Source: Magallana gigas (lineage: Eukaryota). From it: 64,000 nt of DNA. The DNA lies in NCBI RefSeq assembly GCF_963853765.1, contig NC_088859.1:14384001-14448000 (forward strand), read 5' to 3'. A model generated the notes under the pieces. It ran no database searches. It was not told where the DNA came from and saw nothing but the letters and a program-made list of their open reading frames with translations. The translations under genes and the position numbers were made by a program. Positions 42,201 through 47,500 of this stretch are shown piece by piece. Every line of letters starts with the position of its first letter. The first letter of the stretch is position 1.

Positions 42201-44127
42201 TCCGCGATTCGGAAATCGTCGCGAACAAAGCGGAAATTGGATACACGCGGAAAAATCCTGATATACGGTATACTTACTGTTTGAAATTCGCTTCTGAGTG
42301 TGGAAAATGAGTCGGGGTACTTCTCCAGTTCTGTATTACTAACCCCGTTCATCACCATGACAACTATGCTGGCAACTTTTGTACAGCGGAGTAACTTGCA
42401 CCATCTGTCAAACGTAAACTCTTACTACATGCTTTATGTAAAATATGTATAAGAGCTATTCCTTTACATAATGAGTAAGACAGACAAAAGACCAAAGCAA
42501 AAATTACTAGCACTGCCCAAATCAACGAGAAATTTTGATTATTGTATGCATCTTTTATGACTCTATTATTCCATATATATGGTAATGAAAACAAGATGTT
42601 GATAATACAAAGAAGATTTGCAAAGTATGCTTTTATTCACATACATTTCAACTTGAAACTCTTATTAACATTCAAAAGATAAACATTTTGAATATTACGA
42701 CATCTATGACCAAATAAAATGAATACTCAAAGTTTCAGCTCTGATATGACTGGCCAAAGTTACACTTCAATTTAGAGTAAAGCCCCTTTCCAGAAAAAGA
42801 AGTAAGCAGTTGTACCTTGGTTTGATTTTACAAGCAGACCCCTGAACTGCAAACAGAATAAGACTCTGTACATCACTGACAAAGAGTGGAGGAATGTCTT
42901 CATCCTTAAGCTCAGTTCCAAAGTTTGGTGTGTTTTCTTTTGCCAGTTCCTCAAGAGTCAAGAAAACTTTTGGCTTTTCCTGGAATGAAATTAAACTACA
43001 TGTAGTACCGGTAAACATATACTTCCTTTAATAAGACCCTTCTGTAATGCTGATCGAAAAAAAGTTGGGTTTTTTTTTCTCTCATCACATTAGTTGTACA
43101 ATGTACATTTCTTTAATAATAAAAATTGAAAAAAAATATTTGTTTATGATTTTTCTATACCATTGATGCTTTTTGTCTTTCCCTTAAAGCTTGTCTGAGT
43201 TTCAGTAGTTCATCCTCTGCCATTTGTTGAAAGTTTTTAGGTTTTTCATTTTTGCTGCTTCCAGAAGATGTTTCAATGCCATTTTCAACATTAGTCTTGA
43301 ATTCCTCAGTTTTATTCTTTTTATCTGGTGGTGTCTCTTCATCCTATAATGCACATGGATAATTTACAAATTGGTTAAATCAGACACTACTGTAGAATTA
43401 ATGCTATAGTGAATTTTAAATTGACATTAAACACATGCAGATCCTCAGGATTTTGCAGGTGAGGGTAGAGCTTCTGGGGGACCACAGAGGTCCCAGATGC
43501 GATGATGAAATTTCCCATTGGCAGCTTCTGGGGATGCCAACTAGGAGCATCAGATAAATCAGAATAAATAATTTAAATATTGTTTGTACCTTTACCGTTT
43601 TGACAAAATGATTATAATTTTACCTTCATTAGACTATTGTAAAGACAGCAACATGTTCTGTGAATAAATTGTATATCATTTATAAATTTGAATATTGAAA
43701 TTATATTGTACTTGCCTGTCATGTACTGTGTAAATTTGTTCATTGAGTTCCAATGGGCCAAACAGATATACAATGACAACCATTCCATATGATGGTTGGC
43801 ACATTAATTGATTAAACACAATACAAATTTCAGACATCATTTTAGAACATTGCTTTGATTGTCAACATTTACTTTATTGTTGTGCAATATAAGGTCTTAA
43901 AGTAAAACATTAGTGTTATTTGGAATTGATTAATCCTTATTTGGTGCCTTATTAGATGCCTTAAATCATAAATGTGTTTATCAATAACTGAAGGATGAAA
44001 GATCAATCTGTCAAAAACTCTGGTTGTTAAGTATTTATCAAAAACTCACTTCTTTTTTGACAAGCTGTAAGAATGCAGCTGCCTTCCTCTTCTTCGATTC
44101 AACTCTAAAGTCTTTTTTCGTCGTCAT
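36258..44127 (-). CDS. REXO5: DEDDh RNA exonuclease, REXO5/NEF-sp-like, ~653 aa; exons 44127-44050, 43343-43161, 42979-42816, 42404-42278, 41378-41288, 41161-40946, 40810-40725, 40605-40487, 39767-39629, 39123-39023, 38743-38655, 37919-37689, 37005-36812, 36401-36258
   Basis: ExoI SPMFALDCEMCLT, LELTRVSVV, VKPFNRIINYLTEFSGIT, ExoII QSLGGDLRAIKMYHPYVIDTS, ExoIII GHDSVEDA; N-terminal KPRWCKL...VVMVMNG block typical of REXO5. Phases close over 14 exons (1962 nt). The acceptors at 41378 and 41161 are weak AAG sites and are the least certain. Confidence 0.85.
36606..36776. mobile_element. G/C-tract MITE family copy
   Basis: ACGGATCCAGAATTTTTTTCCAGGG...CCCCCCTCTAGATCCGTGCATG, colinear with the 1630-1798 copy. 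Confidence 0.75.
38290..38672 (-). repeat. ~93-128 bp tandem repeat containing the REXO5 exon-11 3' end
   Basis: CACAAGCTCAAGCACC followed by GTATGT at the true donor (38654) and by ATATGT at 38561, 38443, 38315. Confidence 0.88.
41645..42268. mobile_element. Tc1/mariner-type MITE (624 bp) in REXO5 intron 4
   Basis: 24-bp TIRs CCGTATATCAGGTTTTTTCCGCGT / ACGCGGAAAAATCCTGATATACGG (1 mismatch), flanked by TA on both sides. Confidence 0.85.
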
Positions 44128-44551
44128 AGTCTTACAAACGTTCTCAATCTGAAAGCACGGCGAACATTTTCTGTTCACATGTGAGAAAAAATAATCAATG
44201 TCACAATATTTATTTACTTAAATCGGTTAAAATTCATTGCAAAAAACATTTTTCTGATAGAGAACAGTAAAAAGTAAAATACAAACCGTCCTATTTCCGG
44301 TAGATAATTATTTTTAAATAATGCATGATTATGCGCGTTACTTCCAAATAAATAATTGTATGCATTCAATAAATTATATTCTAATAATTAGAATAAATAT
44401 CTATTTATATGCAAACATTTACGTTGAAAAAATAGACACTTTTTAAAAATTTGCAGTATTTGGTTACTTATTTTACCCCGATCCCCCAGCGCCAAACTTC
44501 AAAAATGGTCTGGGTAGTGAGGATGGAAAGAAACAGATAAATTGCAAGGAT
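44128..44551. promoter_or_regulatory. Compact bidirectional promoter / 5' UTR region shared by REXO5 and ERI2
   Basis: The two start codons diverge with only 424 bp between them; ETS-like TTCCGG near 44296. Confidence 0.7.
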
Positions 44552-47500
44552 ATGAAAACAACAAAAGAACTAGCCAGGTGAGCTTATACATTTCAAGTTC
44601 GTCAAAGCCATAGTCATGATAATAAAAGTGAACAATAATTTTTGTTTATTGTTGTTATTGTCAGAGACATAAATAACATGTTATTAATTTATGTCTCTGT
44701 TATTGTGAATACACAATTTAAATATCTCAATATTTTTTTTTTTACAGAGAGCTTGGGCTGTTAAGACAAAGGAGAAATGCCGGCAATGATCGTTTCTCTA
44801 AAAAGAGACCTAGGTCAAATTGTAAGAGATATCCTTTATCACAGCCAATGTTTTGTAAACATGTTTCATCTTCCGTAGAATGTTTTCTTTTATACATGTA
44901 TACCAGGATTAAATTAACTTCTCTGGTTAATGACTTGATTTACCGCTTGATTTACAAACATAAACATGAATTAGGGGGGAGGGGATTGTTATGTTTATAT
45001 ATTTGCATTACCTCATTACGAGTTTTTCTCTTGGCTTCATAGGCCAGCAGTTTTCATATTTGATAATCCTAGACTATGAATCAACATGCTGGGAACAAAA
45101 GAAGTTTCAGACACAAGAAATCAGTAAGAGATTGCTGCAGTGTTCTGACACCCTGTGACTTTCACTTTTTATAATACATGTAGTATGTCCCAATATGGCG
45201 ATTTAAACTCATTATGAAATAGTATACAGTTGAACTTCGATATCTCAAACACTGATATCTCAAATACAATGGATGTGTTGAAGTGATTTGTAAGTCCCAA
45301 CCACATTTTACCTTTGATATATTGAATACTCTGATATCTCAAAGTTTTTAAACAGTCCCATCTAATTCGAGATACCAAGTTTGACTGTATATCATTTTTT
45401 GTCGATTTATAAGGCATCAATCAGCCTTATATCTTTAATGTTATAGTTGAGTTTCCGGCAGTACTGCTGAATACTTTGACTGGTGTAGTTGAAAGTGAGT
45501 TCCACTACTATGTAATGCCTGAAGAACAGCCAATGTTGAGTGATTTTTGTAAACAGCTGACAGGAATAACACAGGTAAAATTAGGTCACTAAAAGCTAAT
45601 GATCATATTCAATGTATGGATTTTTATTTGAATGTTGATAAGTTTTTGATAAATTATGGAGTAAAACCTTTTTCTTTACTGTTTCTTCCTTGGCTTCAAA
45701 TGGAAATGGTTTTTATTACCAGGTATCTTGTCGAATACACTGCAGATATATGTATACATATTAAAGAAAGCTGTCAAATGTATCTTCATACAGTGGGTTT
45801 GGTTTGACTGAGCCCTTTATTTGTTTCATTGTTTGTCAGGAACAAGTTGACAATGGCATCCCACTCCGCCTGTGTTTGAGAAAGTTCTCTCACTGGTTGG
45901 ACAAATTACAGAGGGAGAAAGGTCTCGTGTTTGATCCCCCATCAGAAGATTCCACTGAAGCTTCTTACACCACATTTGTTACTTGGTCAGGTATGCATCT
46001 AATGTAATAATGAAAAGTGAAATATAGTCTGTGTAATGAAAGAGCTTTCAATTTTCTAGTGGGCTGCTGCTGAAAAATTAGAATTTTTAAATACAAAAAG
46101 TCATGTCCATTTAAAGAGTACATGAATATCAAATATTGAATAAATTGTCATTGTTGCAATTAATAAAAATAATTGTCTTATGTCGTATGATAATGTTCAT
46201 AGATTGGGATCTTGGAACTTGTCTTCTCAATGAGTGCAAGAGGAAGCAATTGTTAAAACCTTCACAGTTAAATAACTGGATCGACTTAAGAGCAACATAC
46301 AGGGTGAGAATTTTTAATTATTAACAGTGGAATTAATAAATCGCTTCTTTATTTGTTAAAAAAATTGAGTTCTTCTCTTTTTTACAGTTGGCAAAACTAC
46401 TTGTATTTTTCATAGTGTTTTGAAATGTGGCAGTATGCTTAAGATTCTAAACAAAATTTTGGTCTAATACTCATTCATTCATGGTCTAATATGATTTTGT
46501 TTTTATCATACTCTACAGTGATTACCGGTAATGTCCTTCGTTGAAACATTTTACACTTGGACTTTCATTTAGTTAACCATCTAATTTCCTGTTGCTTTTC
46601 AGAAATTCTATGACAGAAAACCAAATGGTTTGAATGGAGCTTTGCAAGACCTTGGGATTGAGTTTGAGGGTAGAGAGCACTCAGGTACACTTTTAGATAG
46701 TTAGAACTCATATCAAACTTCAAAAGTGTTGGAACAATTGACAAAATTTATATAGAATTGTCAGATTAAAAAGAAGAATTTCAAAATATTTTTTTAATGG
46801 TGTTTACATGTGCATCAACTAAACAACAACTAAAAGCACAGATTTAATGCAGAGAGTATTTTATAAAATAAACTTCTTATAATACAAAAGTAATCTTGTA
46901 TGATAGTTAGCTAGATCTCCAGTGATGTCATATTTTGGTAGTTTTACAGAGAGAAGAGAATAAATCTCTATTTCAAAAACAAAAAAAATCAGGCATAAAT
47001 TTAGCCCTCTGTAACTTGAATTTTTTACCTCTGTCGACTTGTTTCAGGTATTGTTGATGCAAGGAACACAGCTACCCTGGCCTACCGGATGATGTGCGAT
47101 GGATGTGTCATGAAGATTACCAAGTCACTCAATAAAGGGGTAAAGACCAGTATTATCCAGCTCAAGATCTAAACCCTTACAGCAATTCTATGTGACACTT
47201 CAGTGTGAAGTGTTGTGTAAAACTGTAGAATTTTAAATACAAGAGTGAGCAGCAATGTGATAAGTAAAGAACAATGTTCTGTAAACTTGAACTCAAGAAG
47301 CTGCAAATTGATTTTAATTTGAAAAACTTTTAACTAATTCTAAAATATGTAAAAGTTAATAACAATTGTTGTAAATAATTTTGTGTCAATATATAAGAAT
47401 AAATGAATTGTGTTTTAAAAGTTTGTTTGTTGTTTAATTCAGAGGAAATCACAAAGTCTCCTGACATCTAATGCACTGGTCACCAAGGAAACAAGAAGTC

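What the first reader, a model, noticed from the sequence alone, without database searches (positions are those of the whole stretch)
44050..44577. Head-to-head REXO5/ERI2 pair, apparently the same arrangement as in human
Seen: two DEDDh 3'-5' exoribonucleases of different subfamilies diverge with start codons 424 bp apart. From memory, human ERI2 and REXO5 are also head-to-head on 16p12.3. Inference: a bilaterian-age conserved bidirectional unit co-regulating two poorly characterised RNases (REXO5 is testis-enriched in mammals), hinting at a shared RNA-processing pathway, perhaps germline or cell-cycle linked.
Basis: partly seen in the sequence, partly recalled or inferred. Interest (0 to 1): 0.7.

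Follow-up and report, generated by a model that had tools for sequence, protein, structure and literature searches.

The report
Ancient head-to-head ERI2/REXO5 gene pair
In this oyster genome two RNA-trimming enzyme genes, ERI2 and REXO5, start back to back 424 bases apart, the same layout found in other molluscs, a brachiopod, a sea star, an acorn worm, a fish, a gecko and (from a 2010 table) human, so it is a real and very old gene pair but an example of a known phenomenon.

Summary
An ERI2 orthologue lies on the + strand: 9 exons, ATG at 44552, DEDDh exonuclease plus C-terminal GRF zinc ribbon. A REXO5 orthologue lies on the - strand: 14 exons, ATG at 44127. They diverge with 424 bp between their start codons.

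Spliced RNA reads confirm the introns checked and the opposite strands. They leave about 200-355 bp between the two genes untranscribed.

The same head-to-head layout, with 291-637 bp between the coding starts (2235 bp in the gecko), occurs in seven further species:
- Saccostrea
- Haliotis
- Lingula
- Patiria
- Saccoglossus
- Chanos
- Eublepharis

A 2010 supplementary table (PMC2871058, Table S5) lists human EXOD1 (ERI2) and REXON (REXO5) as a divergent pair shared by eight vertebrates. The pair therefore dates at least to the bilaterian ancestor.

Two exceptions were seen. One Xenopus laevis copy of ERI2 has no REXO5 within 10 kb. An intronless Limulus REXO5-like gene stands alone.

No promoter motif is shared across phyla. 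Co-expression and a shared pathway were not tested.

Verdict: real, ancient and well supported. It is a new, invertebrate-wide extension of a vertebrate pair already tabulated, within the known class of conserved bidirectional gene pairs. Interest is moderate to low.

The parts
36258..44127 (-). REXO5 orthologue, coding part. 14 exons: 44127-44050, 43343-43161, 42979-42816, 42404-42278, 41378-41288, 41161-40946, 40810-40725, 40605-40487, 39767-39629, 39123-39023, 38743-38655, 37919-37689, 37005-36812, 36401-36258. 653 aa.
   Evidence: The model is collinear with oyster 'RNA exonuclease 5-like' proteins and 90% identical to P0300. Introns 1 and 2 are confirmed by spliced RNA. The gene tree places it inside Ostreidae, within a metazoan REXO5 clade.
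44050..44127 (-). REXO5 exon 1 (26 codons). RNA contigs run on to at least about 44150 as 5' UTR.
   Evidence: Sequence. tblastn of P0300/P0301 residues 1-26. The 43343|44050 splice joint and the contig end at 44150.
44128..44551 (.). Shared divergent promoter region: 424 bp between the two ATGs, 29% G+C, CpG observed/expected 1.24. The untranscribed core lies within about 44151-44504. No RNA coverage at all falls in 44276-44472.
44175..44184 (.). Palindrome TCACATGTGA (E-box-like), identical in the Saccostrea intergenic region. It lies about 25-35 bp beyond the observed REXO5 RNA end.
   Evidence: Pairwise alignment with L001. Two species only, so this is weak evidence.
44494..44503 (.). Block AAACTTCAAA, identical in Saccostrea, at the observed 5' end of ERI2 RNA.
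   Evidence: Two species only, so this is weak evidence.
44552..48501 (+). ERI2 orthologue, coding part. 9 exons: 44552-44577, 44748-44821, 45043-45123, 45447-45574, 45840-45990, 46203-46303, 46603-46684, 47048-47139, 47443-48501 (stop included). 597 aa.
   Evidence: Collinear with Saccostrea 'ERI1 exoribonuclease 2-like' P0008. All 8 introns are confirmed by spliced RNA. A fish ERI2 matches six of these exons at 46-67% identity, against 35% for the best paralogous locus elsewhere in the genome.
45069..46692 (+). ERI2 DEDDh catalytic motifs: LDYEST (from 45069), SDWDLG (from 45987, split by an intron), EHSGIVD (from 46675, split by an intron).
48184..48318 (+). GRF-type zinc ribbon of ERI2.
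   Evidence: Pfam PF06839, E 3.8e-13, 49.7 bits against a cut-off of 25.9, on the window's own last exon.
38698..40742 (-). REXO5 DEDDh catalytic motifs: ALDCEM (from 40742), GGDLRA (from 39652), GGHDSVED (from 38721).
   Evidence: The D, E, D, H and D columns are invariant in 34 REXO5 orthologues that include vertebrate ones.
43623..43945 (-). Possible alternative first exon of REXO5 inside intron 1, joined to exon 2.
   Evidence: One low-depth RNA contig and the joint 43342->43623 in one run. Weak.

Best explanation
The window holds the oyster orthologues of ERI2 and REXO5. ERI2 is an ERI1-type DEDDh 3'-5' exonuclease with a C-terminal GRF zinc ribbon. REXO5 is a Rex1/REXO5-type DEDDh exonuclease inserted in an alkaline-phosphatase-like domain; like the fly protein, it lacks the vertebrate twin RRMs.

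The two genes are transcribed away from each other from one compact promoter region. There are 424 bp between the start codons and at most about 355 bp between the observed RNA ends.

Shown:
- Gene identity and orthology.
- Divergent transcription.
- The same head-to-head layout, with a similarly short spacer, in lophotrochozoans and deuterostomes.
- From this, the pair was already head to head in the bilaterian ancestor.

Inferred:
- The pair has survived because the two core promoters sit in a single short nucleosome-free region. Almost any breakpoint between the genes would damage at least one of them.
- This interlocked-promoter constraint probably brings some co-regulation. It does not require the two enzymes to act in the same pathway.
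For: Gene identity:
- GRF Pfam hit on the window's own exon.
- The nearest named proteins are 'ERI1 exoribonuclease 2(-like)' and 'RNA exonuclease 5(-like) / NEF-sp / Cg8368'.
- The ERI2 exonuclease domain of the Saccostrea orthologue hits the solved ERI2 structure 7n8v at 1.1e-90. ERI1 scores about 1e-36 and ERI3 4e-30.
- Fish REXO5 and fish ERI2 find this locus as their best match in the window's own genome.
- The REXO5 tree follows the species tree.
- An AF2 model of the 90%-identical P0300 matches over its full length only Sdn5, S. pombe C637.09, mammalian REXO5 and yeast Rex1. It also matches phosphopentomutase and iPGM in the PDB. This is the architecture described in PMC12129344.

Transcription:
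- Spliced, strand-specific RNA, with a gap in coverage at 44276-44472.

Conservation:
- A REXO5 gene lies head to head with ERI2 in seven other species. The gaps between coding starts are: Saccostrea 504 bp, Haliotis 456, Patiria 477, Saccoglossus 291, Lingula 361, Chanos 637, Eublepharis 2235.
- The neighbour was verified as REXO5 by tblastn.
- Human and seven other vertebrates are listed in PMC2871058 Table S5.
- The genes on the far side of ERI2 differ between lineages: MFS transporter, trypsin-like, Nuf2, NDK, ACSM-like. The pair has therefore been kept while its surroundings were reshuffled.
Against: - No promoter motif is shared across phyla. Only short blocks are shared between two oysters.
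- TSSs were inferred from contig ends and binned depth, not mapped.
- Co-expression was not measured.
- A Xenopus laevis ERI2 locus has no REXO5 exon within 10 kb upstream.
- The Limulus REXO5-like gene is intronless and has no neighbours within 10 kb. The linkage can therefore be lost.
- No non-bilaterian and no ecdysozoan with ERI2 could be examined.
- The structural test used a 90%-identical relative, not the window's own spliced protein.
Confidence: 0.8

Rival explanations
1. Functional coupling. The pair is kept because the two exonucleases act in one pathway and must be co-expressed in fixed proportion. Candidate pathways are nucleolar RNA 3'-end maturation, R-loop or genome-integrity work, or a germline role.
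For: - Both enzymes are 3'-5' DEDDh exonucleases.
- REXO5 is nuclear or nucleolar and acts on single-stranded RNA (PMC5558908). It has also been linked to R-loops (PMC11436357).
- ERI2 carries a GRF zinc ribbon. From my own knowledge, not tested here, this domain binds single-stranded nucleic acid in other proteins.
- Both genes are expressed at similar low depth in the same oyster RNA samples.
- The arrangement is conserved for the whole of bilaterian history.
Against: - There are no data on interaction, shared substrates or correlated expression.
- Mouse REXO5 is reported to be testis-specific, and its knockout is viable and fertile (PMC5558908).
- ERI2's function is essentially unknown.
- Linkage has been lost in at least one Xenopus laevis copy and in Limulus.
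- Conserved divergent pairs are common without any shared function.
Confidence: 0.15
2. Passive survival. The spacer is so small a target for rearrangement breakpoints that the adjacency has persisted without any selection on the arrangement itself.
For: The spacer is only 291-637 bp in seven of eight species. Head-to-head pairs with short spacers are known to be over-represented among conserved adjacencies (PMC2871058).
Against: The same layout is retained in at least five phyla, while the other flanking genes have changed in nearly every lineage examined. In practice this rival merges with the best explanation, because a break in so short a spacer would hit a promoter.
Confidence: 0.05
3. 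Convergence or mistaken orthology. The invertebrate pair arose independently, or involves paralogues of ERI2 and REXO5.
For: Mollusc REXO5 lacks the twin RRMs of vertebrate REXO5.
Against: - RRMs are a vertebrate-specific insertion (PMC12129344).
- The tree is congruent with the species tree.
- Best hits in the window's genome fall at this locus.
- ERI2 is far closer to the solved ERI2 structure than to ERI1 or ERI3.
- Orientation and spacing are the same in eight species.
Confidence: 0.02

Closest known systems
Human/vertebrate ERI2 (EXOD1) - REXO5 (REXON, NEF-sp, LOC81691) divergent pair on 16p12.3, listed in Davila Lopez et al. 2010, Table S5 (PMC2871058)
   Same: The same two orthologous genes in the same head-to-head orientation with a very short spacer. 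In human the annotated distance is '<0'. In Chanos there are 637 bp between the coding starts.
   Different: - The 2010 table lists vertebrates only. Here the pair is shown in molluscs, a brachiopod, an echinoderm and a hemichordate.
- Oyster REXO5 lacks the twin RRMs.
- The oyster spacer is AT-rich (29% G+C) and is not a CpG island of the vertebrate type.
- The vertebrate downstream neighbour is ACSM-like. That neighbour is absent here.
Conserved bidirectional (divergently paired) genes in general, e.g. the CDT2-INTS7 intergenic region (PMC2194621) and the ancient metazoan microsyntenic pairs of Irimia et al. 2012 (PMC3514665)
   Same: Head-to-head genes less than 1 kb apart, kept together over long evolutionary times. 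The usual explanation is a shared or interlocked promoter.
   Different: Here both partners are enzymes of one superfamily (DEDDh 3'-5' exonucleases) but of different subfamilies, so they are not tandem duplicates. Shared regulation has not been shown.
Rex1/Rexo5/Sdn5 clade of DEDDh exonucleases (Daniels et al. 2025, PMC12129344)
   Same: A DEDDh domain inserted in a discontinuous alkaline-phosphatase-like domain, with no KIX or CHORD domain and, like fly Rexo5, no RRMs.
   Different: Nothing structural. This gene is an ordinary invertebrate member.
ERI2 (solved exonuclease domain 7n8v/7n8w)
   Same: An ERI1-type exonuclease domain, about 66-69% identical between the oyster protein and deuterostome ERI2s, plus a C-terminal GRF zinc ribbon.
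   Different: The linker between the two domains is unconserved and shorter. The protein is 597 aa, against about 690 aa in tetrapods.

Membership tests
ERI2 (ERI1 exoribonuclease family member 2) | ERI1-type DEDDh exonuclease domain with all five catalytic residues | tested here: met
   The motifs LDYEST, SDWDLG and EHSGIVD are in the spliced model. Orthologues carry Pfam RNase_T.
ERI2 (ERI1 exoribonuclease family member 2) | C-terminal GRF-type zinc ribbon | tested here: met
   PF06839, E 3.8e-13, on window 47566-48501.
ERI2 (ERI1 exoribonuclease family member 2) | Closer to ERI2 than to ERI1 or ERI3, and the best locus in its own genome for a vertebrate ERI2 | tested here: met
   The Saccostrea orthologue is 85% identical to the window over the exonuclease domain. 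It hits ERI2 7n8v at 1.1e-90, ERI1 at about 1e-36 and ERI3 at 4e-30. Fish ERI2 hits six window exons at 46-67% identity, against 35% at C8:41467464.
ERI2 (ERI1 exoribonuclease family member 2) | No N-terminal SAP domain (present in ERI1) | tested here: met
   Only 34 residues precede the exonuclease domain in the model, so a SAP domain would not fit.
REXO5 / Rex1 clade | DEDDh Exo I-III motifs | tested here: met
   ALDCEM, GGDLRA and GGHDSVED are present. The D, E, D, H and D columns are invariant in 34 orthologues.
REXO5 / Rex1 clade | DEDDh domain inserted in a discontinuous alkaline-phosphatase-like (AlkP) domain (PMC12129344) | tested here: met
   Tested on P0300, which is 90% identical to the window protein. 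The AF2 model has pLDDT 77.5. Full-length Foldseek matches are only to Sdn5, C637.09, REXO5 and Rex1. PDB matches include phosphopentomutase and iPGM at E about 4e-5. Pfam gives a weak Metalloenzyme hit in P0156 and P0182.
REXO5 / Rex1 clade | No KIX or CHORD domain (these mark REXO1/Rex3) | tested here: met
   REXO1, GOR and Rex3 match the model only over residues 290-483, the DEDDh domain. There are no such Pfam hits.
REXO5 / Rex1 clade | Twin RRM ('half-pint'-like) insertion of vertebrate REXO5 | tested here: not met
   No RRM Pfam hit in mollusc, annelid, brachiopod or echinoderm orthologues. The gecko and Chanos neighbours do carry RRM_1. PMC12129344 states that the RRMs are restricted to vertebrates, so this feature defines vertebrate REXO5 and not the orthologous group.
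REXO5 / Rex1 clade | Gene tree consistent with one-to-one orthology to vertebrate REXO5 | tested here: met
   ML tree of 37 proteins. Fungi fall outside and deuterostomes, including rat, fish, shark and caecilian REXO5, form a clade (support 93/86); the remaining 28 protostome sequences sit on a weakly supported, partly unresolved fork (81/85). The window falls inside Ostreidae (support 100/100). REXO1 and REXO4 outgroups were not included.
Conserved bidirectional (divergent) gene pair | Opposite strands, 5' ends less than 1 kb apart, both transcribed | tested here: met
Conserved bidirectional (divergent) gene pair | The same orthologous pair in the same orientation in distant lineages | tested here: met
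   Seven further species in five phyla, plus eight vertebrates in PMC2871058 Table S5.
Conserved bidirectional (divergent) gene pair | Correlated expression of the two genes | not tested
   Only four RNA data sets could be laid. Both genes are present at low depth in each. This is not a correlation test.
Conserved bidirectional (divergent) gene pair | Shared cis-regulatory elements in the spacer | tested here: inconclusive
   No motif or 8-mer is shared across seven spacers. Short identical blocks are shared between two oysters only.

The most novel reading that the evidence does not exclude
ERI2 and REXO5 are a functionally coupled pair of nucleases that has been co-regulated from one promoter since before the protostome-deuterostome split. 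They might act in succession or redundantly on the same nuclear or nucleolar substrates (RNA 3' ends or RNA:DNA hybrids). That would explain why the mouse REXO5 knockout has no phenotype, and it would give a first handle on the unknown function of ERI2.
Probability: 0.15. Interest if true: 0.6.

Novelty: new member of a known kind. Interest (0 to 1): 0.3.

Why it matters
ERI2 has no established function, and REXO5's role outside flies is unclear. A linkage kept for more than half a billion years is one of the few clues that connects the two genes.

It also suggests a simple experiment: a double knockout or knockdown with RNA 3'-end and R-loop profiling. This bears on the unexplained viability of REXO5-null mice.

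For genome evolution, the pair is one more well-documented ancient bidirectional pair. It also gives a possible three-gene block, NAA60-REXO5-ERI2, shared by a bivalve and a brachiopod. The pair does not change how such arrangements are understood.

Tried and rejected
- **Pfam on single exons.** The exonuclease exons gave nothing because they are too short. Identity had to come from collinearity with full-length orthologues.
- **Representative-library search with one REXO5 exon.** The three top hits are tandem-repeat proteins in which many weak stretches add up. They are artefacts and were ignored.
- **Promoter motifs.** No ETS, NRF1, YY1, E2F, NFY, SP1, CRE, E-box, TATA or ZNF143 motif, and no 8-mer, is shared by the spacers of the seven non-gecko species. 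The ETS-like TTCCGG sites in the window's spacer are not conserved in Saccostrea.
- **Rfam.** No RNA family in 36000-49000, so no hidden ncRNA gene explains the linkage.
- **Literature.** No paper discusses this pair. Two papers only co-list the genes: a cattle CNV and the 16p12.3 cytoband. The supplements of Irimia et al. 2012 are not held.
- **Failed synteny look-ups.** Owenia and a turtle were withheld, and Amia is not on record.
- **Xenopus laevis.** There is no REXO5 exon within 10 kb upstream of this ERI2 copy. X. tropicalis is listed as having the pair.
- **Limulus.** The REXO5-like gene is intronless with no ERI2 nearby. No ecdysozoan ERI2 turned up among the best 120 hits, so Ecdysozoa remain untested.
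- **Complex prediction.** Not run, because no claim of binding is made.

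
Full report
**What is there.**

The window is G000:C7:14384001-14448000 of a 564-Mb oyster genome. It is AT-rich, about 33% G+C.

On the - strand, an ATG at 44127-44125 opens a 78-nt exon that ends at a GTGAGT donor. On the + strand, an ATG at 44552 opens a 26-nt exon that ends at GTGAGC.

**The + strand gene is ERI2.**

- Its stop-free segments are collinear with the 584-aa 'ERI1 exoribonuclease 2-like' protein of Saccostrea echinata (P0008). Identity is 72-91% in the exonuclease exons and 54% in the tail.
- A splice-aware refinement gives 9 exons and 597 aa.
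- The last exon carries a GRF zinc ribbon: Pfam PF06839, E 3.8e-13.
- The catalytic D, E, D, H and D residues are all present.
- The exonuclease domain is about 66-69% identical to ERI2 of fish, frog, sea star, brachiopod, hemichordate and abalone.
- The Saccostrea orthologue matches the solved ERI2 structure 7n8v at 1.1e-90. ERI1 scores about 1e-36 and ERI3 4e-30.
- A fish ERI2 searched against the window's whole genome hits six exons of this locus at 46-67% identity. The best other locus, on contig 8, reaches 35%.

**The - strand gene is REXO5.**

- One 50-aa exon was searched against 1.84 billion representative proteins. It retrieved full-length proteins that the sources call RNA exonuclease 5 or NEF-sp. 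They come from oysters, other molluscs, arthropods, tardigrades, echinoderms, hemichordates, fish, shark, caecilian and rat.
- The model has 14 exons and 653 aa. It is 90% identical to a 649-aa oyster transcript product, P0300.
- The DEDDh columns are invariant in an alignment of 34 orthologues that includes vertebrate REXO5.
- A maximum-likelihood tree is broadly congruent with the species tree. Fungi fall outside and deuterostomes form a supported clade (93/86); the protostome sequences sit on a weakly supported, partly unresolved fork (81/85). The window sequence lies inside Ostreidae.
- A fish REXO5 finds this locus as its best match in the genome.
- Daniels et al. 2025 (PMC12129344) define the Rex1/Rexo5/Sdn5 clade by a DEDDh domain inserted in a discontinuous alkaline-phosphatase-like domain. 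They state that the twin RRMs are vertebrate-specific.
- An AlphaFold2 model of P0300 (pLDDT 77.5) matches over its full length only Sdn5, S. pombe C637.09, mammalian REXO5 and yeast Rex1. REXO1, GOR, Rex3 and ISG20 match only the catalytic domain.
- In the PDB the model hits DEDDh nucleases, and separately phosphopentomutases and cofactor-independent phosphoglycerate mutases.
- No RRM is detectable in the invertebrate proteins. The gecko and milkfish genes do have RRM_1.

**Transcription.**

RNA contigs and raw stranded poly(A) reads of the same species were laid on 42700-48600.

- They confirm every ERI2 intron and REXO5 introns 1 and 2 at the predicted positions.
- They put the two genes on opposite strands.
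- They show no coverage at all in 44276-44472 in four runs.
- Contig ends and binned depth place the REXO5 RNA end at or beyond about 44150. They place the ERI2 RNA start at or before about 44505.
- The untranscribed spacer is therefore at most about 355 bp. True TSSs were not mapped.
- Both genes are expressed at similarly low depth. Four runs cannot test co-expression.

**Is the arrangement conserved?**

For ERI2 proteins of other species I looked up the encoding contigs and their called genes. An RNase_T gene lies on the opposite strand immediately upstream of ERI2 in all of the following species.

| Species | Group | Gap between coding starts |
|---|---|---|
| Saccostrea echinata | bivalve | 504 bp |
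| Haliotis rufescens | gastropod | 456 bp |
| Patiria miniata | sea star | 477 bp |
| Saccoglossus kowalevskii | hemichordate | 291 bp |
| Lingula anatina | brachiopod | 361 bp |
| Chanos chanos | teleost | 637 bp |
| Eublepharis macularius | gecko | 2235 bp |

The Chanos neighbour has 772 aa and the gecko neighbour 757 aa; both carry RNase_T and RRM_1.

tblastn shows that these neighbours are the REXO5 orthologues:

- P0301 in Saccostrea.
- P0189 in Patiria.
- P0219 in Lingula.
- P0241, 'RNA exonuclease 5 [Chanos chanos]'.
- REXO5-specific N-terminal exons in Haliotis, Saccoglossus and the gecko.

In many further species the two proteins lie on the same scaffold, some of them small: Lingula 269 kb, Ruditapes 522 kb, Mizuhopecten 756 kb. 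In two unionid mussels they carry consecutive locus tags.

Table S5 of Davila Lopez et al. 2010 covers divergent pairs less than 1000 nt apart. It lists EXOD1_HUMAN (A8K979, ERI2) with REXON_HUMAN (Q96IC2, REXO5) at an intergenic distance of '<0'. The pair is shared by Fugu, chicken, stickleback, mouse, medaka, Tetraodon and Xenopus tropicalis.

The genes on the other side of ERI2 differ between lineages. They are an MFS transporter, a trypsin-like gene, Nuf2, NDK and ACSM-like genes. The pair has therefore been kept while its surroundings changed.

The layout occurs in Lophotrochozoa and in both branches of Deuterostomia. It therefore goes back at least to the bilaterian ancestor.

**Exceptions and limits.**

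- One Xenopus laevis ERI2 locus has no called gene and no REXO5 exon within 10 kb upstream.
- The Limulus REXO5-like gene is a single 2109-bp exon with no neighbour within 10 kb and no ERI2 exon nearby. It looks like a retrocopy.
- No ecdysozoan ERI2 appeared among the best 120 hits.
- No non-bilaterian could be examined.
- Three look-ups returned nothing usable.

**The spacer.**

- It has 29% G+C and a CpG observed/expected ratio of 1.24.
- Against Saccostrea it shares only short blocks. The clearest are TCACATGTGA (44175-44184) and AAACTTCAAA (44494-44503), each close to one of the observed RNA ends.
- No classical bidirectional-promoter motif and no 8-mer is shared across the seven short spacers.
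- No Rfam family lies in 36000-49000.

**How it most likely works.**

The shown facts are:
- two orthologous genes;
- divergent transcription;
- a spacer too short to hold two independent promoters with their own flanks;
- retention in at least five phyla.

The inference is that the two core promoters share one nucleosome-free region. A rearrangement that separated the genes would disable at least one of them. This is the usual explanation for conserved divergent pairs (PMC2871058, PMC2194621, PMC3514665).

Whether the two nucleases also work together is open. REXO5 is a nuclear or nucleolar single-stranded-RNA 3'-5' exonuclease. It is reported to be testis-specific in mouse, and its knockout has no phenotype (PMC5558908). 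It has also been linked to R-loops (PMC11436357). ERI2 has a solved exonuclease domain but no established role.

I put the shared-pathway reading at about 15%.

**Novelty.**

The vertebrate pair was already tabulated in 2010, and the class of phenomenon is well known. I found no paper that discusses the pair or shows it outside vertebrates. The extension to molluscs, brachiopods, echinoderms and hemichordates appears to be new but modest.

Noticed in passing
window 28076-29899 (+) and L006:206-1266: The window's NAA60-like acetyltransferase exons lie tail to tail with REXO5. They match, at 67-71% identity, the acetyltransferase gene that lies tail to tail with REXO5 in Lingula. NAA60-REXO5-ERI2 therefore looks like a three-gene block shared by a bivalve and a brachiopod.
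   Followed up: partly
window 45224-45374 (ERI2 intron 3): A short interspersed repeat. RNA contigs cover it about 100 times deeper than the flanking exons, on both strands, with many loose ends at 45223-45225, 45304 and 45374.
   Followed up: no
window 43623-43945 (-): A low-depth RNA contig inside REXO5 intron 1 is spliced to exon 2. It may be an alternative first exon or an alternative promoter.
   Followed up: no
window 49838-51592 (-): An intronless 584-aa BTB-BACK-Kelch ORF lies between ERI2 and the MFS transporter gene (57761-59620, +). In Saccostrea the MFS gene follows ERI2 after 3.3 kb with no called gene between. The kelch gene may be a lineage-specific insertion or retrogene.
   Followed up: partly
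L001:15204-15299 and L001:22271-22366: In Saccostrea the 3' end of ERI2's last exon appears twice. The second copy lies at the end of the MFS gene model, whose 1016-aa product carries both MFS_1 and a GRF zinc-ribbon hit. This may be a local duplication or an annotation fusion.
   Followed up: no
L015:10001-12109 (Limulus polyphemus): The REXO5-like gene is a single uninterrupted 702-codon exon with no called neighbour within 10 kb. It looks like a retrocopy.
   Followed up: partly
L003:1-10000 (Xenopus laevis): This ERI2 copy keeps its ACSM-like downstream neighbour but has no REXO5 exon within 10 kb upstream. X. tropicalis is listed as having the pair. One homeologue may have lost it, or the spacer may be much longer.
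   Followed up: partly
G000:C8:41467464-41469519 (-) and G000:C7:35721229-35721399 (+): These are the best paralogous loci elsewhere in the genome. The first is an ERI1/ERI3-like exonuclease and the second is another REXO-type DEDDh exon. They were not characterised.
   Followed up: no
window 11357-11498: The only run of N in the window. It was left untouched.
   Followed up: no
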